IMG/VR virus record: IMGVR_UViG_3300036766_000194
Location: 235,876 to 299,875 of that record
Reading direction: 5' to 3' (one strand)
DNA length: 64,000 nt
In this document: positions 730 through 60,962 of the stretch, one piece after another
Position numbering within the stretch: position 1 is the stretch's first letter
How the letters are laid out: every line of letters starts with the position of its first letter
Position numbers and translations under genes: made by a program
The notes under the pieces: model-generated
The model's input: the letters and a program-made list of their open reading frames with translations, nothing else
Databases searched by the model: none
Told to the model about the DNA's origin: nothing

Positions 730-1743
730 ATGCAGATTCCTATTCCTCCTTCTGGAGTTATACCTAACCACATTTTTGAAACCTATTGGAATTTTGCCAG
801 TGAGCGTCAACGTGTGTTTTGGAAACGCAAGAATGGTGAACCAGGTCCTTGGAGTGAAGATCCTATTCTGCAAACCTATAAATTTACCAATACTTACCGG
901 GTACTGGATAGAGTCAGCCAGTACCTATTGAGGAATATCATCGTCTATCCGGAGTGTAGCGATTTGGATTGTACAGTCCACTCTTCTCCTGAGAACACAA
1001 TCTTCCGTATTATGTTCTTTAAGCTATTCAATCGTCCAGAAACTTGGGAAATGCTCAGCAGTGAATTAGGCGAAGAACCCCATATAGATAATTTTAACTT
1101 TACCATCTACGATGAAACTCTTACATCTGCTCAAGATCGTGGAGAGAAAATTTATTCCAACGCATACATGATGACAGCTGCGGGTAGTAACGGGGATCGT
1201 CGTCACCGGATGTATTTGCGATTGTATGAAAAGATGTTTCATGAGGATAAAATCCAGGACAAGATTTTAGAAGCCACTTCACTAGAGGCTCTCTACAATC
1301 TTATCCGTACATATCGGACCATGGGACCATTCCTCGCGATGCAGTACGCAATTGACCTCAATTATTCTCCGTTCGTAAATTTCTTAGAGACAGACTTCAT
1401 CATAGCCGGACCGGGAGCTAGAAGAGGAATCCTAAAATGTTTTGATAGCATAGGAAACCACAATGAAGCTGATGTTATAAGATGGGTTCAAGAAACTCAA
1501 GATGAACAATTTATGTCGCGAGGGTTAGAATTTAAAAAGATAGGAAATCGTCCTCTACAGTTAATTGATTGCCAGTCGTTATTTTGTGAGGTGGATAAAT
1601 TTACAAGAGCAAGTAACCCTGAAATCCAGGTTGAGACAGGATCCGGGGATGCTCAAAAACGAGCAAGGATTAAACAGAACTTCAAGGAAAACAGTAATAA
1701 GATTGAGTATGTGTTTCCCTCCAAATGGGGAGTTAAGATATGA
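730..1743 (+). CDS. aGPT-Pplase1 / 5-hmdU DNA kinase helical-domain protein (thymidine hypermodification)
   Basis: Motifs YWNFASERQRVFWKR, PWSEDPILQTYKFTNTYRVLDRVSQYL, GPFLAMQYAIDLNYS, AGPGARRG and LIDCQSLFCEVDKF are typical of the family. ATG 730 is preferred because the called TTG at 640 lies inside the 83-bp repeat. Confidence 0.85.
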   Translation: MQIPIPPSGVIPNHIFETYWNFASERQRVFWKRKNGEPGPWSEDPILQTYKFTNTYRVLDRVSQYLLRNIIVYPECSDLDCTVHSSPENTIFRIMFFKLFNRPETWEMLSSELGEEPHIDNFNFTIYDETLTSAQDRGEKIYSNAYMMTAAGSNGDRRHRMYLRLYEKMFHEDKIQDKILEATSLEALYNLIRTYRTMGPFLAMQYAIDLNYSPFVNFLETDFIIAGPGARRGILKCFDSIGNHNEADVIRWVQETQDEQFMSRGLEFKKIGNRPLQLIDCQSLFCEVDKFTRASNPEIQVETGSGDAQKRARIKQNFKENSNKIEYVFPSKWGVKI

Positions 1744-1935
1744 TGACTTTTCTAGCCAGAGTATCTAGAGGACTTGTAGTTATCTTGAACCTTTATAGTG
1801 ACTTTTATAGTGTTATTAGGGTTGACGGTTTGGACTCTTCTAACAAAGCATCCCTACGGATTCTGGATTATTCTAGGAAGTACGGGAGGGTGTTATCTAA
1901 TGGGTTGGGCTGACGAACGCCTAGAATGGTTATGA
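1740..1935 (+). pseudogene. small membrane protein frameshifted by a 13-nt imperfect duplication
   Basis: ATGA-coupled start. Removing 1788-1800 (AACCTTTATAGTG, a near copy of 1801-1812) gives a 60-aa protein with two hydrophobic segments ending just before the next ATG. Confidence 0.55.
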
Positions 1936-1936
1936 A

Positions 1937-2308
1937 ATGATAGACCACAAAAAAGACTGGATTGGCGTGGACTTTGACGGTACACTAGCTTTCTATGACA
2001 AATGGCACGGTCCCACCCATCTGGGAGAGCCTCTACCCGAAATGGTGAGTCGGGTGAAGCAGTGGATAGCGGAAGATAAGAATGTTCGTATATTTACTGC
2101 TCGTTGTTATTCTCCTATTGATGATGCCATTGCTCAACGAGAAGCAGCAATGGCCTTACTTGCTATGCAAGAATGGTGTCTAAAGCATCTTGGTGCTGTA
2201 CTTCCTATCACTTGTGTTAAGGATTATGGTATGACCGAATTTTGGGATGATCGTGCCGTACAGATGGAAAAGAATACCGGAAAACCTATAAAATCGCGAG
2301 GTGAGTGA
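1937..2308 (+). CDS. HAD-superfamily phosphatase (cap-less, polynucleotide-phosphatase-like)
   Basis: GVDFDGTLA (motif I), IFTAR (motif II), K...WDDRA (motifs III/IV). Confidence 0.8.
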   Translation: MIDHKKDWIGVDFDGTLAFYDKWHGPTHLGEPLPEMVSRVKQWIAEDKNVRIFTARCYSPIDDAIAQREAAMALLAMQEWCLKHLGAVLPITCVKDYGMTEFWDDRAVQMEKNTGKPIKSRGE

Positions 2309-2940
2309 GAATGTATCCCCAACGTATTATAATAAATTTGAGGTCTACAAATGGAGGCGGCAAAACTTTTGCCGTCAAAAGTCTAATAAAGTATATGCAG
2401 GGAATTCCTATGTTCAGGGATGGGAAGATCTGGGCATATAACCTACAAAATCGTGTCTTCGTTTTGGGTCGTTATGAAACTCCAACCGGAGGATGTGATG
2501 GTATACGGACTCAAGAAGAAATCTACGCAGGTATTCGTGAATTAGCAAAGCTAGGTAGCGTAGTATTTGAAGGTGTTCTTATATCCTGTATGTATGGGAA
2601 ATATCGGGAGCTAGAAGATGAACTCAAGCCCACCCATAACTGGATCTGGGCTTGTCTTGACACGCCGTTAGAAAAGTGTATTGAACAGACTCTAAAACGT
2701 CGGGCGGAGAAAGGTAATACAAAACCATTTGACCCAGAAAAGAGTCTTACAGGTAAATTCAGAGGAGTCATCACAACGCGAGCAACCTTAGAGAAGGAAG
2801 GTAGAGATGTCCGTACCCTTAACCACCAGTTCACTCTGGCGAGTCTCTTAGACTGGCTAGGAGAACGTCCTCTAATTTACAGGTCTGTAGAACGCAGAGA
2901 AGCTGTTAGTCCCATTGATATTATGGGAGAGGTAAAATGA
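2305..2940 (+). CDS. P-loop nucleotide/DNA kinase (5-hmdU DNA kinase-like)
   Basis: IINLRSTNGGGKT Walker A variant, VLGRYETPTGGCDGI, VVFEG, LDTPLEKCIE..RR; adjacent to the aGPT-Pplase1 gene. Confidence 0.75.
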   Translation: MRMYPQRIIINLRSTNGGGKTFAVKSLIKYMQGIPMFRDGKIWAYNLQNRVFVLGRYETPTGGCDGIRTQEEIYAGIRELAKLGSVVFEGVLISCMYGKYRELEDELKPTHNWIWACLDTPLEKCIEQTLKRRAEKGNTKPFDPEKSLTGKFRGVITTRATLEKEGRDVRTLNHQFTLASLLDWLGERPLIYRSVERREAVSPIDIMGEVK

Positions 2941-3055
2941 GAGTGATTAAGGAAACATTCGACACTAAATAGCTGCTTATGGCGTTAGACGACATATTGC
3001 TCTTCTTCCAACGTTTTCAAAGTCTTTACAGAAATCTTCCTATAAAGTCCCGACA

Positions 3056-3637
3056 TTACTGCACCAACTCGGGATGACGATACCCCGCCACCGTGAGAAC
3101 CTTGGTAGCATAATCATCCCCGCTAATAGTTCCGTCGTCAGTTCCCATTCCCAGATAGTGATGAAGTCCACCGCGCAATCCGTGAAGTCTTTTGTAAGAA
3201 GATAGAATCTTCGTTCCTTCTTCAATTCCGCGTTCAGGGTCCATAAGATCTTCACAAGGGATGTTCCAAACTCTACTGTTAACCTGCATGTATCCGCAAG
3301 AATAACGCTTAGAAGACGCCTGAGAATGACAACTTGACTCCACAAAAATGAGAGCAGACAATACTCTTGCCGGGATGTTGTGATCAACGGCCTTACGAGC
3401 CGTAATATAGATCAGATCCTCGTCTTCACAGCCATTAGCCGCATAAATATGACGAGAAACATCTTCAGCCATATGATATTTCTTCTGAAGTTTTTCCTGA
3501 GAAATTTGATTGATTATATCCTCAGGGGAGAAAGCCTTAACACGGAGGGGTTGGGGAACTTGAAACTCAGCGGTGATAAAGGACCCTGCTGTAGCTGAGA
3601 AAACTATAATTGAAGTTACAATAACCAATATTCTCAT
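3056..3637 (-). CDS. SLT-family lytic transglycosylase with N-terminal signal/anchor
   Basis: ALIFVESS (catalytic Glu), GYMQV, L.DPE..IE.G..IL, DYATKVL; hydrophobic N-terminus. Confidence 0.85.
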   Translation of the reverse strand: MRILVIVTSIIVFSATAGSFITAEFQVPQPLRVKAFSPEDIINQISQEKLQKKYHMAEDVSRHIYAANGCEDEDLIYITARKAVDHNIPARVLSALIFVESSCHSQASSKRYSCGYMQVNSRVWNIPCEDLMDPERGIEEGTKILSSYKRLHGLRGGLHHYLGMGTDDGTISGDDYATKVLTVAGYRHPELVQ

Positions 3638-3699
3638 ACAGGTATTCTACTGTAGAAAGCAGACTTCGGTTAGTTTGTAAACCTATGTAGATACTGTAG

Positions 3700-3939
3700 T
3701 TACTTGCTTAATTCAGCCTTCAAAGCATCGTGACTCTGGCCCTTATTAACTTTTCCATCAATAATGTGTTTCCAATTATCTCCCGGTCCAGTCCATACTT
3801 CTTCATTTCCTCTAGTGTAGTGATCCCATCCAGAAGGTTCAGCATGTTGGAATTCAAAACCTAAAGGAGTGAGCAACGCCATATCTTCATCACGATCGCG
3901 AGCATCAGCCCAACGGAATAAACGGGAAGTAAGTCTCAT
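3700..3939 (-). CDS. hypothetical protein (79 aa from ATG 3939; frame open back to a TGA at 4050-4048)
   Basis: GAGG RBS before MRLTSRLFRWA. Confidence 0.6.
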   Translation of the reverse strand: MRLTSRLFRWADARDRDEDMALLTPLGFEFQHAEPSGWDHYTRGNEEVWTGPGDNWKHIIDGKVNKGQSHDALKAELSK

Positions 3940-4097
3940 GGGTGCCTCTATAATGAAAGCGAAAAATTGGTGCCTGCAATAACGAATTTTCGAACGAATA
4001 GAGTATTCATAGATAGACGGACGCTCTGTTCGGCGCAACCCGTCAAATCACAAAAACCAAAAATATTCTTTTTGTTTTTCAGTCATAGTCTCACCTT

Positions 4098-4171
4098 TGG
4101 AACGCCCGACGAGACTTGTACCCGCAACCTTCCCTTTTGAAGAGGGCTGCTCTACATTGAGCTACGGGCGT
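4098..4171 (-). tRNA. tRNA with UCA anticodon (putative opal suppressor; not tRNA-Sec)
   Basis: ACGCCCG-TA-GCTC-AATGTA-GAGC-A-GCCCT-CTTCAAA-AGGGA-AGGTT-GCGGG-TACAAGT-CTCGT-CGGGCGT-T-CCA. It has a 7-bp acceptor stem, a 5-nt variable loop and an encoded CCA. The T-loop (TAC) and D-loop are non-canonical. Confidence 0.8.
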
Positions 4172-4389
4172 GTAGTTTTACCAAGATTCATATTCCGTTA
4201 CGTCTAAACTATCGTTACACTTGTTACAGCGGACTACAGTGTTTGGTCCAATTCCACTTGCCCCGCTCTGCGCTACAGTAATATTCTCTCCCTCACAATC
4301 AAACTGGTGGGTAAGAGGGATAAATGGTCACGTTACCACTTCATGAGATCTGAACTTATAAAGATAGCAGGTTGGTTACAGGAACACCA

Positions 4390-4533
4390 TTACGAGAGAA
4401 ATAGGATCAATTCGTATGAGCATTCCAGCAAAAGTAAATTGATAGATGCTTGTTTAAGAATTTCGTTAACAGCAAGTTGTAAATCAAGAGGTAACGGCGT
4501 TAATTGCCGTAACTCATCATCCAGAGATGACAT
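4390..4533 (-). CDS. small hypothetical protein (47 aa, MSSLDDELRQ...)
   Basis: AAGGAG RBS right after the upstream gene; below the ORF-track cutoff. Confidence 0.35.
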   Translation of the reverse strand: MSSLDDELRQLTPLPLDLQLAVNEILKQASINLLLLECSYELILFLS

Positions 4534-4551
4534 TGTAACTCTCCTTAAAGA

Positions 4552-5190
4552 CTAGAACGACAAAATCCAACTAAAAATTAAATTGACTCCAGGCGGTAGT
4601 AAAAGAGGGGGTAGGGTCTTATAATTTATTAGAGTAACTGAATTAGGACTCGGTCCTCCCCCATATGAAATGTCAGCGGGGTTCCAATAAGGAGCCGTAA
4701 GCATGTTGGTGGGAGTCTGCTTAGATCCTCCTCCAATTAAGCCCATTTCTCTTATTCCCACACCTGTGATGTTATCTGTGGTTGCGTTAACAAGTGTTTG
4801 AAAATCCACAAGATTGGTAAACTTTGTAACCGGAGTAAAATTTATATTGTCTGTGGTCGTAACGAAATTTACAGTACTAAGCTGCTTACGCAATACCTGA
4901 GCGATGAGAGCCGTCTGACCAGGGGTTTCTGTAGGCTGGGTATCAGGACTCCAGGTGGGATCTCCAGTTCCTAGAGCCAGTCCCCAAACCGCATAGAGAC
5001 AATCGCTTGATAGAACATTCGGTCCCGAAATGAGAGCCGTATTGGGGAGGTTATTCGCCATGAGTCTAGCAAACAAACTCTTAACTGTGTTGACTATAAC
5101 ATTGGGACTCTGCCACAGAATTTCTCCCGTATCTTGACGAATGATACGCGGTAGCCCCTTTACAACTGTGTTTTCGACATGCTCTAGCAT
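4552..5190 (-). CDS. baseplate/tail-fibre attachment protein (tail-collar-like)
   Basis: NVIVN...LALGTG...QTAL...IREMGLIGG...LINYKT pattern seen in myovirus fibre-proximal proteins; lies after the wedge genes. Confidence 0.55.
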   Translation of the reverse strand: MLEHVENTVVKGLPRIIRQDTGEILWQSPNVIVNTVKSLFARLMANNLPNTALISGPNVLSSDCLYAVWGLALGTGDPTWSPDTQPTETPGQTALIAQVLRKQLSTVNFVTTTDNINFTPVTKFTNLVDFQTLVNATTDNITGVGIREMGLIGGGSKQTPTNMLTAPYWNPADISYGGGPSPNSVTLINYKTLPPLLLPPGVNLIFSWILSF

Positions 5191-5214
5191 AGTGCTCCTC
5201 TAAAATAATACCTT

Positions 5215-6180: not shown

Positions 6181-6183
6181 ATA

Positions 6184-7419: not shown

Positions 7420-7422
7420 GAA

Positions 7423-10400
7423 TTAACTCGTTTTGTAATCCAGCTGTATTCTTCCCGGTACGAAATATTCAGTGCTTGATATCTGTATATCCTTGGCTCC
7501 GCCTTCTCCAAAAACTTGATAAGTTACAAAATAGGACTGTAATCCTGGATTTGCTATAGTAGAAGGAATAGTGATTAGAATTTTCTGAGCATAAGAAGAG
7601 CTTAGGGATTGAGTACTGCTTATTTGATCATTTGTTCCAATTATGTAGAAACTAGGAACAGTACTATTTACTAGGAAATCTTGAACACTTGTAGCTCTAC
7701 GATACGCTTGTCCTTGATACAACAATCCTACATAAGCAGTTGAGGATCCTCCTCCGGGGATAGTCGCATCGGGGAGAACAGCAGAATTGGTTATAAATGA
7801 CTGTATGGGTAATTGTAAGTTTGTAAAAGAAGGATCCGAACTTAAAGGATTCCAGGTTGTCTGTGAAGGGACCACAATTCCTATGTCATAAGCTCCATCA
7901 CTCTTAGCAAACTTTATCAAAGGAAGCTGTACATTGGTAACTCCTGTTACAGACTTAACCTGACGAACAACTTCGGACATGACCAACTTATTACCGGGTA
8001 CATTGTCTAAAACAATGCTAATCATGCTACGGATCTTGGCATCTATAACATCCGGAGATACCTGGGAAGAGATCTCCACCACCATTGTTATATCAACGGG
8101 GTTAGCAATCATTGACTTAACCAGGACATCTGCTGCTGCGTGCTTTGTTACCGCAATTTGAGTTGCTAACTGATTAACAAAAGCAGGATATTGGGTACTT
8201 ATTGAAAATGTCTCATTGATGAAGTAGCTAACTTTCACCGTAGACCCCGTAGGGATCTGTCCTGTAAGAATTCTTGCTAGGCTTGCTATTCCACTGGTGG
8301 AATTATATACTAGAGAAAAGTCAATCCCTTCACGCATAACAACATCAATACCTGCTACGGTAAGTGTTACTTTTATGTATCGGTTATCGTGAGCAATTCC
8401 TGCTCCGGTTAACCCCGTTGCTAAGAGAGGATCGGTGTTAAAACCGTCCAAAGACAGTTGAGTGAAGTCATAAGACTCAGGCATCCACACGTTATGAATA
8501 AACCCCGAGTTTGCCAATTGGCTAGAAACAGTTCCATTAAGAGTTGTGTTTTCTTGATTTACAAATGTAACCTGTTCATATAGAGAATACTTGTAATATG
8601 AAACCACCAAAACAGGGGGATTGACACTGGCTGGGGCAGGAATGCTCCCTGTAGAAACCCTATTCAAACTCCAGTTGTTATAACGTCCAGTCCTAACCAA
8701 GGTGTAATCCACCCCATAAGTATACAAGGTAGAAAGGTCCCCACTACGAACAACTAAGGAAGGTAACACCTGACCGTTGATGGTTTTTTGTAGAACTACG
8801 TTTGCTCCCGAATCAACGTCAACGGACATTGCGTTATCAATAGAAACTATGGAAGAAGTTAACGAGACATTTTTAGTTGTCTGTAATAGGCTAGAAGACG
8901 GAATCAAAATCGTATCTCCTGCTAACTGAGAACCCCCATTCAATAGAAAATCTTGGGTGCGTACTAGTTGTATTGAAGTAGGAGAAACCACCCCGGTATT
9001 CTGATTTCCAGTTACGCTATTCACAGAAATAATGGGTTGTAGGGTAGGAACATTGTTCAAAGGAGTATGAATTCTAGCAAACATTCCTATGCTATAGGTT
9101 CCAGCAGAAGCGGATTGTAAGGCATTGACAGCCACTGAATTTGTAGCCGAAACACCTGCTATGACAAGAGGTTGCTGAGATACAAATACAGAATTTCCTA
9201 CCAGTTGATAGGCTAATTCGTTGGGATTCAAGAAAAGAAACCCATCTGTATTGTCAATGAAAGAATTCAAAGTACCTAAATAAAACGATTGACCACCTCG
9301 TTGTACAATAACTTCTACTGCCTGTTCTAAAGGAGAAGTTAGCTGAGAAAACCCACTTATAGAAAATTTCAAAATACTGCGATCCACAAGAGTCAAGGGA
9401 GTGTAAGCACTAAATGTCCCCTGAGGAGCAGTGTTTTGATATTGATAAATCGCGGTTTCTGTCTGCTGAGAATTGGACGAACCACGAACATATAAATCAA
9501 CTGTACCAAAGACGTGTTTCTGTCGAATAGGATCCCAATCACGCAGCATCTCTAGATCCCCAGCGGCCACAACATTAGCAGCAACAATAGAAGGAATAGC
9601 ACGAGCCTGAATTAAGTATCCATTCCGTGTTCCTGTATCAACTCCAGTAACAATACGGTCCTGAATCTGGGCTGCATAAACAGAATTGTTTTGGCTGTCA
9701 GTTCCAAAATTAGCCGGAACTAAGTTTGTTACACTCCAACCTTGAGGTCCCCCACTAACCACTGTAGTAATTGTTCCTACTCCTACATTTCCAATACTTC
9801 CAGTGGTTGTACACTGAGCGGGAACTATCACCTGGTATCTTCCATATTGGGAATCGAAAAAACTGGACGCGGAGGCAGGAGAAATAGACGCACTTCCTGT
9901 AGTTACAAAATTTAACGCAGGAGTCTGAGAGTTTGGGCTAGTTGCTACAATAGCTCCTTGAGGGATAACTATAGATTGTAGAGGTTTAGTGTATGTGTAG
10001 AAAGTAAGATTAACAACCGCTGTTGTAGATCCCCCTCTCACAACACCTGCCTGCTCACCCAACATATCAAACTGCTTATTGATGAATGCCTGTGTATCAG
10101 AAGCCTTCATTCCATAAGCTCTAGAAATCTGCTGTTTTATAGGAGAATCAGAGTAAGAGTCACTAATTCCATCATTATTAGCATCATCAATCTGAGTAAT
10201 AGCACTGATACTAGAAGCCATATGACTGAACCACTCTCGAACAGACATGTTAGATAGTTCTACTGCGATAGGATCAATAACTAAGTCACGCAATTCGGAA
10301 CGAGGAGTTAAGTCTAGTTGAGGATAGGCGCGAGTAATTTGAGAGATCATTCTCCCTGCTATATCCTCCTTACGCTGTAATCCTAAAAAGTCTGTAGGAT

Positions 10401-11340
10401 TTACCTTCTTTAGATTGACAAAACCACAAGTAAGAGGACCATTCTGCTGAGACTCAAACACCACGTTGGTAGTGGGGTCTTGAATAACTGTAGAAAATAA
10501 GGCATAAAACTTGTCCGAATTGATAGCTGAGGTAGGGACAAAAATAGAACTATAATTGGTTGTTTGGGTTGAAGTAACAGTGGTTGCTGTGGTAGTGTTT
10601 CCACTAACGACCGTGGTGGTATTAGAAGTAACCGGGTCGTTTGATGTCCTGCTGATGGTTGTTACCAAGTCTCCAAATTGAGTATAGGGTATCGTAACCC
10701 CGGAAGAATCTGTTGATAATACAGCTCTTACACCTAAAAATCCGGTGAAAGGGGGAGTTGCCCATTCTAATTGACAAGATTGGGAACCCTTATAAGCTCT
10801 TAAAGCTGATGGAGGACTAATCTTTAAAGCTAGTCCTGAATTGAAGAATAGAAGAGTAAACTTAGAAGTCGGTGTTATAGCGATGGGCCCTAAACACTTC
10901 CAAATAACTGTTCCATCTGTGGTAATAGAACTTGGTACAGTTCCCCAAGTAGGTGCTGTGAACCCCGTAATCCCTGCGATCAAAACTACCTGAACATTTC
11001 CATTGCTATCGGTAACTCTATAACCCACAGCAAGAGAAGTAGAAGTGGCCCATACTACGTTTGGGACATAATTTCTTCCCGTAATCTGTACAGTTGTTGA
11101 AGCTACACTAGTGTCTAGAGGTATGGTCCCAGAAAATGTGTTAAAAAATCCTGTAACAGGATTTGAAAATACCAGAGTCTGACTGTAGATAGAAATTTCT
11201 AAACGTATGGTATTAGCATCGGTTTGAACCTTAAAAGGTAAGATAGAAGTGTCAACAGACAGAGTGCTTACCCCTTCTGTAGAAGGTATGTAAGGCGACA
11301 AAATAGATATAGGTGTTAAGCTAGAAATCGGTGCTGACAT
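7423..11340 (-). CDS. baseplate J-like wedge protein (T4 gp6/P2 gpJ family), 1305 aa
   Basis: RDLVIDP, IPQGAIV, VPAQCTTTGSIGNV..GTIT, VTN...FGTD..., GTVDLYV, C-terminal V.GVTNV. Confidence 0.8.
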   Translation of the reverse strand: MSAPISSLTPISILSPYIPSTEGVSTLSVDTSILPFKVQTDANTIRLEISIYSQTLVFSNPVTGFFNTFSGTIPLDTSVASTTVQITGRNYVPNVVWATSTSLAVGYRVTDSNGNVQVVLIAGITGFTAPTWGTVPSSITTDGTVIWKCLGPIAITPTSKFTLLFFNSGLALKISPPSALRAYKGSQSCQLEWATPPFTGFLGVRAVLSTDSSGVTIPYTQFGDLVTTISRTSNDPVTSNTTTVVSGNTTTATTVTSTQTTNYSSIFVPTSAINSDKFYALFSTVIQDPTTNVVFESQQNGPLTCGFVNLKKVNPTDFLGLQRKEDIAGRMISQITRAYPQLDLTPRSELRDLVIDPIAVELSNMSVREWFSHMASSISAITQIDDANNDGISDSYSDSPIKQQISRAYGMKASDTQAFINKQFDMLGEQAGVVRGGSTTAVVNLTFYTYTKPLQSIVIPQGAIVATSPNSQTPALNFVTTGSASISPASASSFFDSQYGRYQVIVPAQCTTTGSIGNVGVGTITTVVSGGPQGWSVTNLVPANFGTDSQNNSVYAAQIQDRIVTGVDTGTRNGYLIQARAIPSIVAANVVAAGDLEMLRDWDPIRQKHVFGTVDLYVRGSSNSQQTETAIYQYQNTAPQGTFSAYTPLTLVDRSILKFSISGFSQLTSPLEQAVEVIVQRGGQSFYLGTLNSFIDNTDGFLFLNPNELAYQLVGNSVFVSQQPLVIAGVSATNSVAVNALQSASAGTYSIGMFARIHTPLNNVPTLQPIISVNSVTGNQNTGVVSPTSIQLVRTQDFLLNGGSQLAGDTILIPSSSLLQTTKNVSLTSSIVSIDNAMSVDVDSGANVVLQKTINGQVLPSLVVRSGDLSTLYTYGVDYTLVRTGRYNNWSLNRVSTGSIPAPASVNPPVLVVSYYKYSLYEQVTFVNQENTTLNGTVSSQLANSGFIHNVWMPESYDFTQLSLDGFNTDPLLATGLTGAGIAHDNRYIKVTLTVAGIDVVMREGIDFSLVYNSTSGIASLARILTGQIPTGSTVKVSYFINETFSISTQYPAFVNQLATQIAVTKHAAADVLVKSMIANPVDITMVVEISSQVSPDVIDAKIRSMISIVLDNVPGNKLVMSEVVRQVKSVTGVTNVQLPLIKFAKSDGAYDIGIVVPSQTTWNPLSSDPSFTNLQLPIQSFITNSAVLPDATIPGGGSSTAYVGLLYQGQAYRRATSVQDFLVNSTVPSFYIIGTNDQISSTQSLSSSYAQKILITIPSTIANPGLQSYFVTYQVFGEGGAKDIQISSTEYFVPGRIQLDYKTS

Positions 11341-11359
11341 TATGAGGTCGCCTTTTTCA

Positions 11360-12781: not shown

Positions 12782-12794
12782 ACGTCCTCCTTCC

Positions 12795-18185: not shown

Positions 18186-18231
18186 TAGGGTGTCCTACTG
18201 AGTATTTCTGTATTTTCAATGTGTATAATCA

Positions 18232-24240: not shown

Positions 24241-24247
24241 CTTTATC

Positions 24248-35214: not shown

Positions 35215-35255
35215 ATTTTGTTTCTCCTAGTATTGGAACTAAAAGTCAAGAAAAC

Positions 35256-35969: not shown

Positions 35970-35970
35970 G

Positions 35971-36234: not shown

Positions 36235-36274
36235 ACGCAGACTCCTCTCTATTTGAAAACGAGAAGTCTACAAA

Positions 36275-45344: not shown

Positions 45345-45345
45345 G

Positions 45346-49688: not shown

Positions 49689-49691
49689 TTA

Positions 49692-50339: not shown

Positions 50340-50438
50340 GTTATCTCCCTCTTACTGTAACCACGTATATCTGAAGATTAATTCTATTACTCAATCTAAT
50401 CATTAACCTTTTTTCATCTCATCTAGTAGAATAACTAC

Positions 50439-52468: not shown

Positions 52469-52508
52469 TACCGGATATATCTTCGCTTAGGAGTATTAGA
52501 GTCATACA

Positions 52509-54925: not shown

Positions 54926-55045
54926 GAAAAATTTAGTATTAATAAGCGAGGAATGAAAAACCTATGATTTAGATCCTTTTCTTACTATGATTTCTTTAAC
55001 GTGTTTGTATACAAAGGGTTAAAAAGAAATAAGAAATTTTCGCTT

Positions 55046-55074
55046 TTGAACTGTTCGGGAAATTTCTGTATCAT
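55046..55074 (+). promoter_or_regulatory. sigma70-type promoter upstream of the RNR gene
   Basis: TTGAAC-N17-TATCAT with an A-rich upstream tract. Confidence 0.5.
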
Positions 55075-55152
55075 ACCGTTAGGACTTTTGTAAGCGCAAA
55101 AATCCAACGACAATTAAACACTACACAATAATCAAAAGGGGAAGGTTTGTCT

Positions 55153-57069
55153 ATGAGTAGTACGCAGAAGTTGTCTCCATATCAATCCTATATTCATAAA
55201 TCACGTTATGCGAGATGGTTACCCGAGAAGAAACGTAGAGAAGAATGGGAGGAGACAATTGATCGCTACTTGAAATTTTTTGCCCCTCGTATACCAAAAG
55301 CTGAGAGAATAGATGTTTTAGCAGAACTTAAAGAAGCTATTCTAAGTCTCAAAGTCATGCCTAGTATGCGGGCTATGATGACAGCTGGTGAAGCTCTAGA
55401 GAAGGACAATGTAGCTGGATATAACTGTTCCTACATAGCTATTGATGATCCTCGCGCCTTTGATGAAGCAATGTACATTAGTATGTGTGGAACTGGGGTA
55501 GGATTCTCCGTTGAGCGTCAATATGTAAACAAGATGCCCACGATTGCAGAAGAATTCTTTACCACTAACACAGTCATCAAGATAAAAGATTCTAAGATTG
55601 GTTGGGCTTCTGGTTTTAAAGAACTCATCCAGCTTCTTTATGTAGGATTGATTCCTTCTTGGGATCTAAGTTTAGTTCGTGAAGCGGGTGCCCCTTTAAA
55701 AACTTTTGGTGGTAGGGCATCAGGACCTGCTCCTCTAGATAATCTTTTTAAATTCACTGTGTCTGTATTCAAGAAAGCAGCGGGAAGAAAACTAAATTCA
55801 CTTGAATGTCATGACTTGATGTGTAAGATAGCTGATGTTGTGGTAAGTGGGGGTGTTCGTCGTTCGGCTATGATTAGCCTTTCTAACTTATCGGATGACC
55901 GTATGCGTAACGCCAAAAACGGTCAATGGTGGATAGAAGATGGACAACGTGCTTTAGCAAATAATTCCATAGCTTATACAGAGGGTCGTCCCGAGCCTGT
56001 AATATTCTTCCGTGAATTTGGCACTCTCATTGAATCTAAATCTGGTGAACGTGGTATGTTTAGCCGTGTTGGAGCCCAAAATCAAGCTAAGAGAACAGGT
56101 CGTCGTAAATGGGAGAATGTGGAATTCGGAACAAATCCTTGCGGTGAAATTATTCTTCGTCCTATGGGATTCTGTAATTTAACCGAGGTTGTCGTTCGCA
56201 CTGAGGATACCCTAGACTCTCTTAAGAATAAGATTCGTCTAGCAACTATTTTAGGAACACTTCAGTCCACTCTGACAGAATTTCGTTATCTCCGTAAGGC
56301 TTGGCAGAAGAATGCCGAGGAAGAACGGCTTCTTGGAGTGTCTCTTACTGGTATCATGGACCACCCAACACTCTCGTCGTTGAAGGAACCAGAAGTCTTG
56401 GGCAAAGTACTTCGTCAATTGAAACAAATGGCTATTGACACAAACATAGAATGGGCGGACAAGCTGAGTATCAATCCCTCCGTTTCCATTACTTGTGTTA
56501 AGCCTTCAGGAACGGTTTCTCAGCTGGTAAACAGTTCCAGTGGCATTCACACTAGATGGAGCCGTTACATCATGAGAAGCGTCCGTAATGATAAGAAGGA
56601 CCCATTAGGAGCCATGTTAAAGACCCTTGGGATACCTTGGGAGGCCGATGTTACAAAACCCAACGATGTAGATGTTTTTTATTTCCCTCTTGAATCCCCA
56701 GAGAAGTCCGTTACACGCACGGAACGTAATGCTATTCAACAGTTGGAACTTTATCTCATTTATAAGCAGAATTGGTGTGAGCATAATCCCTCTTGCACCA
56801 TATATGTTCAGGATGATGAGTGGGTCGATGTTGCTGCCTGGGTGTATAGGAATTTTGCGGAGATTGGTGGAATCAGCTTCCTCCCTCATTCCGAGCACAT
56901 CTATCGGCAAGCTCCCTTCCAAGAACTTACGGAGGAGGAGTACAGGAAAGCTCTAGAAACATTTCCCAAGGACATTGACTGGAGTCGTTTGCCAGAGTTT
57001 GAAAAAGAAGACCACACAACTTCAACGAAAGAATTGGCCTGTTCTGCAAATGCTTGTGAGCTAATTTAG
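55153..57069 (+). CDS. nrdJ: class II (B12-dependent) ribonucleotide reductase
   Basis: SRYARW, MPSMR, YNCS, GGVRRSA, TNPCGEI, CVKPSGT, C-terminal CSANAC; no beta-subunit gene adjacent. Confidence 0.85.
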   Translation: MSSTQKLSPYQSYIHKSRYARWLPEKKRREEWEETIDRYLKFFAPRIPKAERIDVLAELKEAILSLKVMPSMRAMMTAGEALEKDNVAGYNCSYIAIDDPRAFDEAMYISMCGTGVGFSVERQYVNKMPTIAEEFFTTNTVIKIKDSKIGWASGFKELIQLLYVGLIPSWDLSLVREAGAPLKTFGGRASGPAPLDNLFKFTVSVFKKAAGRKLNSLECHDLMCKIADVVVSGGVRRSAMISLSNLSDDRMRNAKNGQWWIEDGQRALANNSIAYTEGRPEPVIFFREFGTLIESKSGERGMFSRVGAQNQAKRTGRRKWENVEFGTNPCGEIILRPMGFCNLTEVVVRTEDTLDSLKNKIRLATILGTLQSTLTEFRYLRKAWQKNAEEERLLGVSLTGIMDHPTLSSLKEPEVLGKVLRQLKQMAIDTNIEWADKLSINPSVSITCVKPSGTVSQLVNSSSGIHTRWSRYIMRSVRNDKKDPLGAMLKTLGIPWEADVTKPNDVDVFYFPLESPEKSVTRTERNAIQQLELYLIYKQNWCEHNPSCTIYVQDDEWVDVAAWVYRNFAEIGGISFLPHSEHIYRQAPFQELTEEEYRKALETFPKDIDWSRLPEFEKEDHTTSTKELACSANACELI

Positions 57070-57098
57070 AGCTTTCCCCTACCAGTGGAGAAACCCAT

Positions 57099-57503
57099 TT
57101 GGTTGACAAAGAGAACATCATCTACGGTTACAGTCAGGGGTGTTTGAAATGTCTGGGAAAACGACACCGAGGTCAGAATAATGGCAATTGGAAGGGATAT
57201 AGAGAAATTCCCGTATCATACTTCTATTCTCTCAAAGAAGGAGCATTGGCTCGTGGCATTTCGTTTGAGGTACTAATAGAAGAGATACAGAATCTCTGGG
57301 AGAAGAGCGGCGGATATTGCGCTTTGACTGGTTGGAAGATTGAAATAGGTAAAACCGCTTCTCTAGACAGAATACAGAGTGAGGACTCCTATAAGAAAGA
57401 GAATCTTCAGTGGGTGCACAAGGATATAAACCGTATGAAAAATAACTATTCCCAGGATCGGTTTATTGAAGTCTGCCGTGCGGTTGCGGAAAGGACGAAT
57501 TAA
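57099..57503 (+). CDS. HNH-type homing endonuclease (possibly N-truncated)
   Basis: CALTG...ASLDRI.S...Y...N.QWVH..IN.MK. Confidence 0.75.
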   Translation: MVDKENIIYGYSQGCLKCLGKRHRGQNNGNWKGYREIPVSYFYSLKEGALARGISFEVLIEEIQNLWEKSGGYCALTGWKIEIGKTASLDRIQSEDSYKKENLQWVHKDINRMKNNYSQDRFIEVCRAVAERTN

Positions 57504-57506
57504 GGC

Positions 57507-57785
57507 ATGAAACAGATACTTGTTTTCAAGGGCCGTCGTAAGAGCGATGGCAAGATTATCGAGCAGCCATACCCGGTGGAGATGGAGCAACCCTCCCACG
57601 CCCCGGCCATCGCCGCCGCGTTACTCCAGAAGATGTTCGCCCTGACTGGAGTAGTGGGCATGGATTCCGATGCGACAGACCGGGTGATACTGATCCCTGC
57701 TCATTCTTGCGATCAAATTTGGTGTGATATTCCGAGCATCATCCTAGTAGATGCTCTCGAAGGACAGGAACTTATCAGACCATGA
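57507..57785 (+). CDS. hypothetical protein
   Basis: ATGA-coupled to the next gene. Confidence 0.6.
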   Translation: MKQILVFKGRRKSDGKIIEQPYPVEMEQPSHAPAIAAALLQKMFALTGVVGMDSDATDRVILIPAHSCDQIWCDIPSIILVDALEGQELIRP

Positions 57786-58396
57786 AGATTGCGTTCTGTG
57801 GAACGTCTTCCGTGGGGAAGACAACCCTTGCCAAACTCGTTGCTAAGAAATTGAACCTTCCCATTCTAACGGACAAGGATCTTCATCGTGAGGTCTTCAC
57901 CCTCATGGCCGAGCAGGGGCACCCGGTTTCCACAGAATATTTTCCTGGAATGACGCGTCAGGAGCACGTTGATTTTGAACGCCATGTTTGGCTCTGTCGT
58001 CAGGACGCCCTGCGCCGCTTAGGAAATGACTGGATCACCGACGAATCACCCATCGATTTCATCAATTGGTTCTACATCGTCTGTGGCCCGTACCCGGAGC
58101 ACATGAGTGCCGACGAGTTCCGCTTCTTCAAGAACTGTTTTCTGAAAGAACTCCCACATTATGATCTGATCGTGTATCTCCCGGTGGGTGTTCTCCCCGT
58201 TGAAAATGACAATCGCCGCTTCACCAATAGCGTGAGCCTGGAGTTCTGGGACAATGCTATCCGCGGACTGCTTTTCAAGCTCTCGGATGATTTGGGGAGT
58301 CGTCTTCTAATCGTCCCGCGTGAGACCACGGACCTTGAAGCGCGTGCTGCTTTAGTTGTTGAGACCGTTGAGCTTCTTGTAAAGCACTGCGTCTAA
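57782..58396 (+). CDS. AAA_28/NadR-type P-loop nucleotide kinase
   Basis: MKIAFCGTSSVGKTTLA, WITDESPID, YDLIVYLP...ENDNRR. Confidence 0.75.
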   Translation: MKIAFCGTSSVGKTTLAKLVAKKLNLPILTDKDLHREVFTLMAEQGHPVSTEYFPGMTRQEHVDFERHVWLCRQDALRRLGNDWITDESPIDFINWFYIVCGPYPEHMSADEFRFFKNCFLKELPHYDLIVYLPVGVLPVENDNRRFTNSVSLEFWDNAIRGLLFKLSDDLGSRLLIVPRETTDLEARAALVVETVELLVKHCV

Positions 58397-58768
58397 CGGC
58401 GTCCAGAATTGAAACCAATCAGAAACGGTATCATATCTTACGGGATTTTCTTCGTCTTCTTCTATGTGTAAACTATATCTTTCTTGCTTGTAAGTGTAGA
58501 CATGAAGACCTACAATTAGACAATCTTCTACGTGTGAATTAGGAGTGAGTTTCTCCGGAAGCCCTAAGTAAGCAACGATAGGAAAAGTAAAGATAATACA
58601 GTTGAGGTTATCTTTATCGTTGTTAAAACTAATCCTGACCTTCTTACTATCTTGGGTGAAACTATCTAGAACAGAATATTGGTAATCTCCAGTGGAAAGC
58701 TCTTTACATATAGTTTGAAGGTCTGACACCGATACAAGGTAGGCTTGGTCTACTTCCATTTTTACCAT
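58352..58768 (-). CDS. hypothetical protein
   Basis: 138-aa ORF downstream of the AADT gene. Confidence 0.5.
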   Translation of the reverse strand: MVKMEVDQAYLVSVSDLQTICKELSTGDYQYSVLDSFTQDSKKVRISFNNDKDNLNCIIFTFPIVAYLGLPEKLTPNSHVEDCLIVGLHVYTYKQERYSLHIEEDEENPVRYDTVSDWFQFWTPLDAVLYKKLNGLNN

Positions 58769-58891
58769 TCCAAAACATTCAGTAAAGCCACGGAATCGGT
58801 TTTAAGAAGAGAGCGAAACACATTCTTTATTCTATGAACAGAATAATTACAATTAGGAATTTCCGGTTTTGTCATTTTGTACCTGCTCCTA

Positions 58892-60070
58892 TCAGTCATT
58901 TACTCTCCCGTAAATCCTGTCATTGTATCTGTTTTTGAATACCGGATCCCACTCATCCATCATTACTGGGCAACCTGTTTCTCTAAAGTGATTCTGTTTT
59001 TCTGCTTTCACCCCAATATCTGTGGGATTAAATTCTAATAATAAATGAGCAGGAAGATTTTCTTTTCTGGCGTCCCAAAATTCAGAAAAATCATTCTCTG
59101 GCCAATCTGACTCTGCCTTCTTAATACGGTTGTATAGCATGTCTGTATAAACATTAGGATAACGACGGTTGGGGCGGTACCAACTCTTATAGGTACAGAA
59201 CGTGCTCTCTAAGGTGAAGTAGGAGACATCATGGAAGTAAGGCTTATCCTTCATACGTTCTTTTGCTTCCTTCAAAAGCTCTGCAGCTTCCTTCTCTAAC
59301 CAAGATAGCATCTCGGGAGTATACTTCCCGTCAAACCTAGTGGTGTTTGAATCGTGCCAATCCAAGTCATCCCTTCCTAAGACTTTTGCCAAACCATTAC
59401 GATGAGATTTACTGCCGCTCATATCATCTAGAAACAGCTGATCACAATCTATGTTAAAACGCATGGCTCGTAGATACTCTAGATACGAGAAGGAACTCAA
59501 TCTTCCAAAACTGTAAAAGTTCTTTCTGACCTCTTCCCAGGCTTTACGGAAATTTTGGTAAGGATCAGAAGTTCCCATGAAAGTTGAAAAATATTCTTCC
59601 TGACTATCCTTACAATGATGTTTGTACTCAGTCACAGCTTTGATGAAGTTCCTCTTATTTTTAACCCTGTCCATGTCAAATGCTAGACGTTTCCATTCAG
59701 CATTGAACCAAGTGGTGAGAGCAGAAATATCCAGGGTAGATAAATCAGGGAAGTGATTGAAGATTATCTTAGAGGTTAAAGGATTTTGTGTATGCCCGTT
59801 TAAGTAGGCAAACCAGAGTCGTTGCTCCGCATCCCAATTGTATTTCTTATAAAGAAATGGCATTAGTAGGTAGACCAGGCCAGGGTGGAGATGATATTTG
59901 CAATGAAATTCGTAGAAGCGGAGGAAGACTTCGCGGCGGTAACGAGGATGACGGAAGTCCATCCCGTATTCAAGATCCGTAACTTCGGGCACGTAGTTTA
60001 GGTCAGACCAACGTCCTATAGTTGTGTGAGAAACATCGGGATAAAAATTAAGCATGAGGCCTACTCCCAA
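58892..60070 (-). CDS. amino acid:DNA transferase (aGPT-Pplase2 / AADT)
   Basis: DFR.P.YRREVFLRFY...HPG.VY, WFAYLNG.TQN, FGRLSSFSYLEYL, GS.SHRNGL, FTLES..CTYK...RYP..Y.D. Confidence 0.85.
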   Translation of the reverse strand: MGVGLMLNFYPDVSHTTIGRWSDLNYVPEVTDLEYGMDFRHPRYRREVFLRFYEFHCKYHLHPGLVYLLMPFLYKKYNWDAEQRLWFAYLNGHTQNPLTSKIIFNHFPDLSTLDISALTTWFNAEWKRLAFDMDRVKNKRNFIKAVTEYKHHCKDSQEEYFSTFMGTSDPYQNFRKAWEEVRKNFYSFGRLSSFSYLEYLRAMRFNIDCDQLFLDDMSGSKSHRNGLAKVLGRDDLDWHDSNTTRFDGKYTPEMLSWLEKEAAELLKEAKERMKDKPYFHDVSYFTLESTFCTYKSWYRPNRRYPNVYTDMLYNRIKKAESDWPENDFSEFWDARKENLPAHLLLEFNPTDIGVKAEKQNHFRETGCPVMMDEWDPVFKNRYNDRIYGRVND

Positions 60071-60962
60071 TTATCCAGTATAAACTCTTGTCATTCAGAT
60101 ACGGACGAAACTCGTCCAGATGGTCTTTCATGTAGCACCACGTTTTCGCTTCATATCTTGGATGGAATTTCAAACCATCATAGTTAAATTCTTTCAGATC
60201 TTCATACGAGGTGTAGCCCGAATCTATCAAGTCATGTTCAATGAAATTGTAGGGAAGAGGGAGGGCATCCCCAGTCACCTTGCGAATTATGTCTAGACGT
60301 TCATTTGTCCAACGTTGGTGCTTTGCTATGTTACCCATGATGCGGAATAAGATAATGTTTTTCAGGGAAGCGGGACGGAACCTTGCAATGCCATAAAGAA
60401 TAGATGTAAGAGAATTACAACTACCCGCAGGGATTAGAAGATTTTCAATGTGGGAGGGTATGTTGCGAACTTGTTCACTTCCCACTCTATGAAAGCCCTC
60501 CACCCGCGCCGGGTCATTAACTTTGTGTTCTACTGTGATGTTGGTTTCTATATGAAGCCATCCACGTTCGTTGGCAAATTTCTTTGCCTGTGCGTTGAGA
60601 TTGCCCGCGTAGCCAGGATTAACGTGTTGTATGACGGCACCACTTGCTTTGGCCGATTCGATGCTCTCATATTTAGAGGGAGCATCGGTATTCTTCCCGC
60701 CTGTAAATTGAACACACTTCATCCCGTAGTGCTTGGCGCAAGCCGCAACCATTGCGTGTTGGGGAGACCCGCCAACGGCTCCTGATGAAACCCCAGGGAA
60801 GGGACGTTCGTTAAAAAGCCAGATCAATTGTCGGAATTTGCTGCCGTTGTTGACCCCGTCAGGACTGTATAAGTCGTCTCTTTTGAACCACATTCCGCCA
60901 ATGCTTTGAACGGGAGTAAGGTCCAGTAAGTAGTCTTCCCATTTGGCTATGATGTTGTTCAT
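60048..60962 (-). CDS. PLP-dependent enzyme (fold II) of thymidine hypermodification, probable decarboxylase
   Basis: LTPVQ....WFKRDDL......GSK.RQ, SPQ, IPAGSCNS...IL.G, HPRYEAK..., LYWI; coupled to the AADT gene. Confidence 0.8.
   Translation of the reverse strand: MNNIIAKWEDYLLDLTPVQSIGGMWFKRDDLYSPDGVNNGSKFRQLIWLFNERPFPGVSSGAVGGSPQHAMVAACAKHYGMKCVQFTGGKNTDAPSKYESIESAKASGAVIQHVNPGYAGNLNAQAKKFANERGWLHIETNITVEHKVNDPARVEGFHRVGSEQVRNIPSHIENLLIPAGSCNSLTSILYGIARFRPASLKNIILFRIMGNIAKHQRWTNERLDIIRKVTGDALPLPYNFIEHDLIDSGYTSYEDLKEFNYDGLKFHPRYEAKTWCYMKDHLDEFRPYLNDKSLYWIIGSRPHA

What the first reader, a model, noticed from the sequence alone, without database searches (positions are those of the whole stretch)
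730..60962. Thymidine hypermodification pathway split across both sides of the virion module
Seen: aGPT-Pplase1 protein, HAD phosphatase and P-loop kinase at 730-2940; AADT and PLP enzyme about 56 kb away at 58892-60962, with another nucleotide kinase at 57782. Established: in ViI-, M6- and phiW-14-type phages, 5-hmdU in DNA is phosphorylated, substituted by an AADT and then tailored. Kinase + AADT + PLP decarboxylase without a radical-SAM enzyme gives the ViI product 5-NeOmdU. Inference: this unrelated giant-fibre myovirus carries an amine-hypermodified T. The kinase Walker A is atypical (STNGGGKT), and the HAD phosphatase could trim unused phospho-hmdU or sanitise nucleotide pools, so the final base may differ.
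Basis: partly seen in the sequence, partly recalled or inferred. Interest (0 to 1): 0.7.

Follow-up and report, generated by a model that had tools for sequence, protein, structure and literature searches.

The report
Base-hypermodification genes lacking usual precursor enzyme
A complete 300-kb jumbo phage carries an intact ViI-type kinase, amino-acid transferase and decarboxylase set for decorating DNA bases, but its only precursor enzyme looks built to hydroxymethylate cytosine rather than uracil nucleotides, so either the precursor route or the target base is new.

Summary
Window 730-1743 is a PF18723 protein (aGPT-Pplase clade 1 type). 1937-2308 is a small HAD phosphatase. 2305-2940 is a 5-hmdU DNA kinase homologue with Walker A STNGGGKT. 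58892-60070 is an amino-acid:DNA transferase (AADT, PF18724) with the catalytic Glu/Cys. 60048-60962 is a ViI gp226-type PLP enzyme with the cofactor lysine.

The map is circular, so the set is larger. Two more PF18723 paralogues lie 5-10 kb past the window end.

The genome is rated 100% complete. It has no dUMP hydroxymethylase, no ThyX and no Tet/JBP dioxygenase. Its single thymidylate-synthase homologue has the T4 gp42 signature: Asp at E. coli N177, an acidic residue at L143, and Asp at D169. That predicts 5-hmdCMP as its product.

Among related AADT-bearing viral genomes, every near-complete one has an Asn-type dUMP hydroxymethylase or a Tet/JBP enzyme. Only this phage and one 265-kb relative pair the pathway with the Asp-type enzyme plus a dCMP deaminase.

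Best reading (about 0.5): 5-hmdCMP is deaminated to 5-hmdUMP, which feeds a ViI-like aminoethoxymethyl-T pathway. Main rival (about 0.2): the pathway modifies 5-hmC.

The parts
730..1743 (+). PF18723 (HMUDK_hel, aGPT-Pplase clade 1 type) protein, paralogue A; ViI gp160-like
   Evidence: Pfam 5.4e-98 and phrog_2396 1e-60. 24% over 369 aa to ViI gp160. Invariant Cys-Glu pair shared with ViI gp160, M6 gp55 and SH-Ab 15599 gp16. The ORF opens at TTG 640; ATG at 730.
1937..2308 (+). Small capless HAD-type phosphatase; substrate unknown
   Evidence: DFDGT motif I and FWDDR motif. phrog_1238 and phrog_415 hits are weak. Viral HAD clusters in the Atlas. Overlaps the kinase start by 4 nt. No homologue in 80 related loci or in G002.
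2305..2940 (+). 5-hydroxymethyl-pyrimidine DNA kinase homologue (5-HMUDK family), atypical Walker A STNGGGKT
   Evidence: phrog_800 4e-15. 32% to M6 gp54 at 6e-15. 24% to ViI gp67. PF18748 only 13.7 bits, below cut-off. P-loop alignment. 40% to the G002 homologue.
55147..57069 (+). Ribonucleotide reductase (class II-like), part of the conserved RNR-kinase-PLP-AADT block
   Evidence: phrog_367 8e-173 and RNR Pfam domains. Same order in G002, L013 and L022.
57782..58396 (+). AAA_28 P-loop kinase, candidate (d)NMP kinase for the modified nucleotide
   Evidence: PF13521 1.5e-9. Atlas clusters are AAA_28 with dNK or cytidylate-kinase traces. 44% homologue next to the RNR in G002.
58352..58768 (-). 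138-aa ORF directly downstream of the AADT; no family match
   Evidence: No Pfam or PHROG hit. No G002 homologue. Its membership of the pathway is unproven.
58892..60070 (-). Amino-acid:DNA transferase (AADT, aGPT-Pplase clade 2)
   Evidence: PF18724 58 bits against cut-off 26. 28% to ViI gp247 at 1.7e-24. 1313 homologues. ExxxC catalytic motif. AF2 model pLDDT 93.5; top PDB match PaMx11 gp46, 8z2m.
60048..60962 (-). Fold-type II PLP enzyme, ViI gp226-type decarboxylase candidate
   Evidence: PALP 8.7e-9 and phrog_3650 8e-64. 31% over 359 aa to ViI gp226 at 1e-53. Lys aligned to gp226 K92. PLP gene adjacent to the AADT in 42 of 80 related loci.
61123..63531 (+). ResIII/SF2 helicase-like protein between the AADT-PLP pair and the genome start; context only
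   Evidence: PF04851 8e-9 and phrog_16. C-terminus hits phrog_11371, as do the methyltransferase-like ORFs at C1:664-1668 and 3007-3405.

Best explanation
The window holds most of a working ViI-type, post-replicative pyrimidine-C5 hypermodification pathway.

Proposed steps:
1. A DNA kinase phosphorylates a 5-hydroxymethyl pyrimidine in DNA.
2. The AADT attacks C6 with its cysteine, expels phosphate, and adds an amino acid. The amino acid is probably serine, joined through its side-chain oxygen.
3. The PLP enzyme decarboxylates the adduct to an aminoethoxymethyl group.

Three PF18723 paralogues, a HAD phosphatase and an AAA_28 kinase are accessories of unknown role.

The unusual part is the precursor supply. 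The phage has no dUMP hydroxymethylase and no Tet/JBP dioxygenase. It has a T4 gp42-type dCMP hydroxymethylase. I propose that 5-hmdCMP (or 5-hmdCTP) is deaminated by the phage's dCMP deaminase to the 5-hmdU nucleotide, which is then incorporated and modified. The end product would be a 5-NeOmdU-like thymine replacement, possibly alongside 5-hmC.

Shown: gene identities, catalytic motifs, absence of the usual precursor enzymes, and conservation of the same combination in a second jumbo phage. Inferred: the deamination step, the amino acid used, and the final base.
For: Gene identities.

Completeness and precursor enzymes:
- The genome is rated 100% complete and has a 127-bp terminal repeat.
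- It has a single TS homologue, C1:111324-112148.
- That protein has Asp172 aligned to T4 CH Asp179 / E. coli N177, Asp138 at L143, and Asp164 at D169. The residue rules come from Lee 2026.
- The verified dUMP hydroxymethylases of ViI, M6 and SH-Ab 15599 all have Asn at the N177 column.
- No ThyX or Tet/JBP.
- A dCMP deaminase is present.

AADT unchanged relative to T-modifying clusters:
- 50-60% identical AADTs sit in compact PLP-AADT-kinase-Pplase1 clusters next to Asn-type hydroxymethylases.
- 101 alignment columns are invariant across both groups, with no Asn-to-Asp-like switch.
- The AADT tree is star-like. The two Asp-associated AADTs do not group together: the G002 clade is strongly supported and excludes ours.

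Conservation: the same combination occurs in G002, with kinase 40%, AADT 57%, PLP 45%, hydroxymethylase 47% (Asp type) and deaminase 47% identity.

Precedent for the deamination step: phage deaminases linked to dCMP-type TS homologues yielded 5hmdU in DNA when co-expressed with T4 gp42 and gp1 (bioRxiv 10.1101/2024.12.05.627091).

Base preference of a characterised kinase: 5-HMUDK phosphorylates hmU-DNA but not hmC-DNA (PMC6457204).
Against: - Nothing here shows that this deaminase accepts 5-hmdCMP. Only 7 of 90 tested deaminases did so in the preprint.
- The deaminase lies 82 kb from the hydroxymethylase.
- The hydroxymethylase clade normally occurs without an AADT: 24 of 25 records lack one.
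- In RsoM2USA the same clade sits beside a true Td synthase and a DHFR, which is a T4-like hmC scheme.
- The kinase is the most divergent component (27-33% to canonical kinases) and has an odd P-loop, so a changed base preference cannot be excluded.
- No recognised dTTPase or dUTPase was found.
- The serine assignment rests on about 28-31% identity to the ViI enzymes.
Confidence: 0.5

Rival explanations
1. The pathway works on 5-hydroxymethylcytosine. The gp42-type enzyme puts hmC into DNA. The divergent kinase phosphorylates hmC, and the AADT and PLP enzyme build an aminoalkoxymethyl-cytosine. This would be the first amino-acid-derived cytosine hypermodification.
For: - The only hydroxymethylase is cytosine-type.
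- No known hmU source is present in a complete genome.
- The same pairing is kept in a second, divergent jumbo phage.
- The kinase is divergent, and its P-loop substitutions (Ser for the first Gly, GGGK for GSGK) are absent from the nine homologues aligned, including G002's.
- Relatives of the hydroxymethylase clade look like hmC phages.
Against: - The AADT is 51-57% identical to homologues from clusters with Asn-type dUMP hydroxymethylases, and 51-56% to those from Tet/JBP-bearing records.
- It has no group-specific active-site change.
- The two Asp-associated AADTs do not group together in the tree.
- The characterised kinase ignores hmC.
- No precedent was found in the literature searched.
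Confidence: 0.22
2. The Asp-type hydroxymethylase of this clade accepts dUMP, alone or as well as dCMP, and is fed by the dCMP deaminase. The phage would then follow the ordinary hmU scheme with an unusual enzyme.
For: In this hydroxymethylase clade a deaminase gene lies within about 4 kb in roughly 13 of 20 records. That is the layout also seen in hmU phages such as M6.
Against: - Asp at this position sets cytosine preference in TS and in T4 CH. This is cited in Lee 2026 and in the deaminase preprint.
- The clade shares the CT, NSNYG and HVYERH motifs with gp42, not with verified dUMP hydroxymethylases.
- RsoM2USA carries it alongside a true Td synthase.
Confidence: 0.12
3. The hypermodification genes are a recently acquired module with no substrate, or one used for something other than genome-wide base modification.
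For: The hydroxymethylase clade and the AADT clade almost never co-occur: 1 of 25 records. The components are scattered over the genome.
Against: - All reading frames are intact and the catalytic residues are kept.
- The set is conserved at 40-57% identity in a second genome.
- The PF18723 gene has been duplicated.
Confidence: 0.08

Closest known systems
Salmonella phage ViI 5-NeOmdU pathway (gp67/gp243 5-HMUDK, gp247 serine:DNA transferase, gp226 PLP decarboxylase, gp160 clade-1 Pplase; Lee 2018 and 2021)
   Same: Homologues of all four protein types, with no radical-SAM isomerase. The genes are dispersed in the genome, as in ViI. The AADT Glu/Cys and the PLP lysine are kept.
   Different: - Identity is only 24-31%.
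- ViI has an Asn-type dUMP hydroxymethylase next to gp67. This phage has an Asp-type enzyme only.
- It has three PF18723 paralogues, where ViI has the single clade-1 gene gp160.
- It has one kinase instead of two, and that kinase has an altered P-loop.
- It has an added HAD gene.
Metagenomic compact clusters PLP-AADT-HMUDK-Pplase1-dUMP hydroxymethylase, or with Tet/JBP (IMG/VR; the type shown in Lee 2021 Fig. 2)
   Same: AADT 50-63% identical, and the PLP gene adjacent in 42 of 80 loci. These are the nearest sequence relatives of the AADT.
   Different: Every genome of that set that is at least 90% complete has an Asn-type hydroxymethylase or a Tet/JBP enzyme. This genome has neither.
T4 gp42 dCMP hydroxymethylase and the hmC nucleotide scheme
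   Same: The catalytic Cys, Asp179-equivalent and acidic L143-equivalent are present, with 32-33% identity to T4-like gp42. A dCMP deaminase and all-alpha NTP pyrophosphatases are present.
   Different: No Td synthase was found, and no family match to a dUTPase-type dCTPase. DNA glucosyltransferases were not searched for. The enzyme is combined with a kinase/AADT pathway, which T-even phages lack.
Phage deaminases co-localised with dCMP-type TS homologues (modified-cytosine-selective deaminases; bioRxiv 10.1101/2024.12.05.627091)
   Same: A dCMP-type TS homologue plus a PF00383 deaminase plus an all-alpha NTP pyrophosphatase in one genome. Some such deaminases turn 5hmdC nucleotides into 5hmdU that enters DNA.
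   Different: There the role proposed is pool balancing in modified-C phages. Here the product would feed a T-hypermodification pathway. In this genome the deaminase is not adjacent to the hydroxymethylase, and it is fused to an Endonuclease VII domain.
Ralstonia jumbo phage RsoM2USA
   Same: Closest cultured relative of the hydroxymethylase (51% identity, Asp type).
   Different: No AADT. It has a true Td synthase and a DHFR. No nucleotide-level similarity to the window.

Membership tests
AADT / aGPT-Pplase clade 2 (PF18724) | Profile match above the curated cut-off | tested here: met
   58.1 bits against a cut-off of 26.2, E 1.4e-16, one copy in the genome. Also listed in the precomputed table. 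hmmscan missed it.
AADT / aGPT-Pplase clade 2 (PF18724) | Essential cysteine with nearby glutamate (shown by mutagenesis in M6 gp51 and ViI gp247) | tested here: met
   FTLESTFCTYKSW aligns with the M6 VETVLC and ViI ET..C motifs. Requirement taken from Lee 2021.
AADT / aGPT-Pplase clade 2 (PF18724) | Helix-hairpin-helix Pplase2 fold | tested here: met
   AF2 model pLDDT 93.5. Top three PDB matches are PaMx11 gp46 (8z2m, 8z2n): prob 1.00, TM 0.61 by target, E 0.05. HhH glycosylases come next.
AADT / aGPT-Pplase clade 2 (PF18724) | Transfers an amine or amino acid to 5-PmdU in DNA | not testable with these tools
   Needs an enzyme assay.
5-hmdU DNA kinase (5-HMUDK) | Homology to experimentally verified kinases | tested here: met
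   M6 gp54 32% over 190 aa at 6e-15. ViI gp67 24% at 1e-5. phrog_800 4e-15.
5-hmdU DNA kinase (5-HMUDK) | Pfam PF18748 match above cut-off and canonical P-loop GxxGSGK[ST] | tested here: inconclusive
   PF18748 scores 13.7 bits against a cut-off of 27. The P-loop is STNGGGKT: GK[ST] is kept but the first Gly is replaced by Ser.
5-hmdU DNA kinase (5-HMUDK) | Specific for hmU rather than hmC in DNA | not testable with these tools
   Known for the characterised enzyme. Unknown for this one.
ViI gp226-type PLP decarboxylase | Homology plus the Schiff-base lysine | tested here: met
   31% over 359 aa at 1e-53. NGSKFRQLIWL aligns with gp226 K92.
aGPT-Pplase clade 1 / PF18723 | Profile match above cut-off | tested here: met
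   Three paralogues score 328, 120 and 85 bits against a cut-off of 25. All are homologous to ViI gp160 and M6 gp55.
Thymidine hypermodification system as described (ViI, M6, PhiW-14, PaMx11) | A source of 5-hmdU: an Asn-type dUMP hydroxymethylase or a Tet/JBP thymine dioxygenase | tested here: not met
   The only TS homologue is Asp-type. No Tet/JBP. No ThyX. The genome is rated 100% complete.
dCMP hydroxymethylase (T4 gp42 type) | Catalytic Cys; Asp at E. coli N177; acidic residue at L143; Asp (not Asn) at D169 | tested here: met
   C141, D172, D138 and D164. Rules from Lee 2026.
HAD phosphatase | Motif I DxDx[TV] and the acidic motif IV | tested here: met
   DFDGT and FWDDR. No Pfam match, so the subfamily and substrate are unknown.

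The most novel reading that the evidence does not exclude
The kinase, AADT and PLP enzyme act on 5-hydroxymethylcytosine supplied by the gp42-type enzyme. The product would be a 5-(aminoalkoxy)methyl-cytosine, the first amino-acid-derived cytosine hypermodification, and it would extend the 5-HMUDK/AADT chemistry to a second base.
Probability: 0.2. Interest if true: 0.85.

Novelty: new variant of a known kind. Interest (0 to 1): 0.6.

Why it matters
All described thymidine hypermodification pathways start from 5-hmdU made by a dUMP hydroxymethylase or by a Tet/JBP dioxygenase. A complete genome that keeps the downstream enzymes but has only a cytosine-type hydroxymethylase points to one of two things.

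- A third route to hmU, by hydroxymethylating dCMP and then deaminating it. That would link the recently found modified-cytosine deaminases to T hypermodification.
- A switch of the whole pathway to hmC.

Both can be tested with four or five recombinant proteins. Either result would change how modified bases are predicted from phage genomes, and therefore how restriction resistance, sequencing behaviour and enzyme-tool mining are approached. The three PF18723 paralogues also offer a handle on a protein family whose function is still unknown.

Tried and rejected
- Nucleotide searches of both arms against cultured phages found nothing.
- A single-protein scan of IMG/VR for the AADT found nothing. 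An alignment was needed.
- A profile search of PDB sequences with the AADT alignment gave only noise. Fold search was needed.
- I looked for a second precursor source. ThyX and Tet/JBP are absent. ViI and M6 hydroxymethylase queries hit only the one ORF.
- I looked for known dTTP, dUTP or dCTP hydrolases. PF00692 and PF03819 are absent. There is no homologue of the SH-Ab 15599 gp18 dTTPase, the ViI NTP pyrophosphatase or MazG, or the M6 HD protein. Only two unassigned all-alpha pyrophosphatases and a NUDIX protein were found.
- Radical SAM: one sub-threshold ORF next to an RlaP gene, with no similarity to M6 gp53. I rejected it as a pathway member.
- I tested whether the deaminase tracks the AADT within the hydroxymethylase clade. 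It does not: 20 of 26 records have one regardless.
- I searched for residues that separate Asp-associated from Asn-associated AADTs. Only one strict site was found (Gly to Arg/Lys at position 204), and there was no acid/amide switch. The same test on the kinase is uninformative with only two sequences.
- The Atlas look-up of the 590-aa ORF between the extra paralogues gave only a weak methyltransferase lead.

Full report
**Setting.** The window is the last 64 kb of a 299,875-bp viral record. The record is rated 100% complete and has terminal repeats. The repeat is an exact 127 bp. I therefore take the map as circular, with the window end joining the genome start. No cultured phage matches either arm at the nucleotide level.

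**The observation.**
- Window 640/730-1743 matches PF18723 at 5.4e-98 and phrog_2396. It is the homologue of ViI gp160, the clade-1 aGPT-Pplase: 24% over 369 aa, E 1.5e-19.
- 1937-2308 is a 123-aa HAD protein with DFDGT and FWDDR motifs. It has no Pfam assignment and belongs to small viral HAD clusters.
- 2305-2940 overlaps the HAD stop by 4 nt. It is a 5-HMUDK homologue: phrog_800 at 4e-15, M6 gp54 32% at 6e-15, ViI gp67 24%.
- 58892-60070 scores 58 bits on PF18724 against a cut-off of 26. It is 28% identical to the ViI serine:DNA transferase gp247, E 1.7e-24.
- That protein keeps the glutamate and cysteine that mutagenesis showed to be essential. Its model (pLDDT 93.5) finds PaMx11 gp46 as the best solved structure.
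- 60048-60962 is 31% identical over 359 aa to the ViI decarboxylase gp226, E 1e-53. It keeps the lysine aligned to K92.
- 57782-58396 is an AAA_28 P-loop kinase.
- The stretch between the arms contains a baseplate-wedge protein and an SLT domain. Most of its giant ORFs have no family match.

**The pathway is larger than the window shows.** Two further PF18723 proteins lie at C1:2126-3046(-) and C1:5720-6646(+), which is 5-10 kb beyond the window end.
- They are 48% identical to each other and 30-31% identical to M6 gp55. The window copy is ViI gp160-like.
- All three paralogues, together with the three reference proteins, share an invariant Cys-Glu pair.
- Adenine-methyltransferase-like ORFs surround them.

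**Relatives.** The AADT has more than 1300 homologues.
- In IMG/VR, 80 loci carry AADTs 49-63% identical to this one. The PLP gene is adjacent in 42 of them.
- Several loci are compact clusters of PLP, AADT, HMUDK, Pplase1 and a hydroxymethylase.
- A 264,912-bp record, G002, shares the order kinase-RNR-PLP-AADT. Its identities to this genome are HMUDK 40%, AADT 57% and PLP 45%.

**The precursor problem.** Known pathways begin with 5-hmdU from a dUMP hydroxymethylase or a Tet/JBP dioxygenase. This genome has one TS-family gene, C1:111324-112148. It has no ThyX and no Tet/JBP enzyme.
- Aligned to the T4 dCMP hydroxymethylase structure, its Asp172 falls on T4 Asp179, which is E. coli ThyA N177.
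- Its Asp138 is at the L143 position, and its Asp164 is at D169.
- By the rules summarised by Lee et al. 2026, that combination means a dCMP substrate and a hydroxymethyl product. It also rules out a 5-hydroxy-dCMP synthase.
- The dUMP hydroxymethylases of three phages whose virion DNA is shown to carry hypermodified T (ViI, M6, SH-Ab 15599) all have Asn there, and share other motifs (PCN, GAYG) that this protein lacks. It shares CT, NSNYG and HVYERH with gp42-type enzymes.
- Its closest cultured relative is RsoM2USA gp10 at 51% identity. That phage also has a true Td synthase and a DHFR, and has no AADT.

**Is the mismatch unusual?** Yes.
- Of 24 larger AADT-bearing records, seven have a TS homologue. 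Five of these were checked and are Asn type. A sixth, G019, was not recovered in that alignment; its locus L040 matches the M6 dUMP hydroxymethylase at 45%. Only G002's is Asp type, 47% identical to ours.
- Of the 17 records without a TS homologue, ten have a Tet/JBP enzyme, including all four that are at least 90% complete.
- So every near-complete genome of this AADT clade has a recognised hmU source, except this one. G002 has no Tet/JBP enzyme either.
- In the other direction, of 25 records carrying the Asp-type hydroxymethylase clade, only G002 has an AADT.

**Which base?** Two readings survive.

For hmU by deamination:
- The genome encodes a dCMP deaminase (C1:28969-29871, fused to an Endonuclease VII domain) two genes from an all-alpha NTP pyrophosphatase. 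G002 has homologues of both.
- A metavirome study found such deaminases linked to dCMP-type TS homologues. Seven of them gave 5hmdU in DNA when co-expressed with T4 gp42 and gp1.
- The AADT shows 101 invariant columns with Asn-associated homologues and no acid/amide switch.
- In a star-like tree, ours does not form a separate clade with G002.
- The characterised kinase ignores hmC.

For hmC as the target:
- The enzyme that makes the hydroxymethyl base is cytosine-type.
- The kinase is the most divergent part of the pathway and has an altered P-loop.
- The hydroxymethylase clade otherwise looks like a T4-style hmC system.

I put these at about 0.5 and 0.2. Relaxed hydroxymethylase specificity gets about 0.1, and an idle module less than 0.1.

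**The product.**
- The PLP enzyme needs a free alpha-amine.
- No M6-type isomerase is present.
- The nearest characterised AADT and PLP enzymes are the ViI pair.
- A serine-derived aminoethoxymethyl group is therefore the best guess, but at about 30% identity it is only a guess.
- The HAD gene is not a conserved partner of the pathway. The role of the PF18723 paralogues is unknown.

**Verdict.** The case is a new variant of a known system, and its open question can be settled with a few recombinant enzymes.

Noticed in passing
genome C1:2126-3046(-) and C1:5720-6646(+), 5-10 kb beyond the window end on the circular map (locus L010): Two more PF18723 (clade-1 Pplase type) genes, 48% identical to each other and M6 gp55-like. 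With the window copy that makes three paralogues, all keeping a Cys-Glu pair.
   Followed up: yes
genome C1:28969-29871 (locus L006:1033-1935): The dCMP deaminase domain (aa 157-267) is fused in one ORF to an Endonuclease VII / treble-clef domain (aa 74-149). The homologue in G002 is a plain 159-aa deaminase.
   Followed up: partly
genome C1:28007-28564; about C1:113369-113887; C1:110420-110884: Two all-alpha NTP pyrophosphatases (PF18909, and a weak PF12643 match) and a NUDIX protein lie near the deaminase and the hydroxymethylase. They are candidate dCTP or dTTP hydrolases of unknown specificity. A DUF4031 gene sits directly upstream of the hydroxymethylase.
   Followed up: partly
genome C1:664-1668, 3007-3405, 3407-5179 (locus L010): Adenine-methyltransferase-like ORFs sit among the extra PF18723 genes: an Eco57I-type Pfam hit, a methyltransferase PHROG hit, and a weak Atlas lead. 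Together with the neighbouring pathway genes they form a DNA-modification island across the genome junction.
   Followed up: partly
genome C1:152352-153245 (locus L099:988-1881): A radical-SAM-like ORF just under the Pfam cut-off, next to an RlaP nucleotidyltransferase. It is not similar to the M6 gp53 isomerase.
   Followed up: partly
window 12795-28186: Three consecutive giant ORFs (1796, 2002 and 1312 aa). The two scanned (1796 and 1312 aa) have no PHROG match; the 2002-aa ORF (18232-24240) was not scanned. In the whole inter-arm region only 7423-11340 (baseplate wedge) and 3056-3637 (SLT) were assignable.
   Followed up: partly
IMG/VR loci L012-L091 and records G001-G024: In this AADT clade, each genome that is at least 90% complete has either an Asn-type dUMP hydroxymethylase or a Tet/JBP dioxygenase. 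Ten of the 17 records without a TS homologue carry Tet/JBP.
   Followed up: yes
records G025-G048 and RsoM2USA: In the Asp-type hydroxymethylase clade, a PF00383 deaminase gene lies within about 4 kb of the hydroxymethylase in roughly 13 of 20 records that have one.
   Followed up: partly
window 58892-60070: hmmscan against Pfam returned no family for the AADT even at E 10. The whole-genome search scored PF18724 at 58 bits, and the precomputed table lists it. This is a tool discrepancy worth knowing about.
   Followed up: yes
locus L100 and two records without DNA: An identical hydroxymethylase protein with the same neighbours occurs on contigs from three other samples (ENA ERZ27247960, SRR11714510, JGI 3300032173), so this phage or a very near relative recurs.
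   Followed up: no
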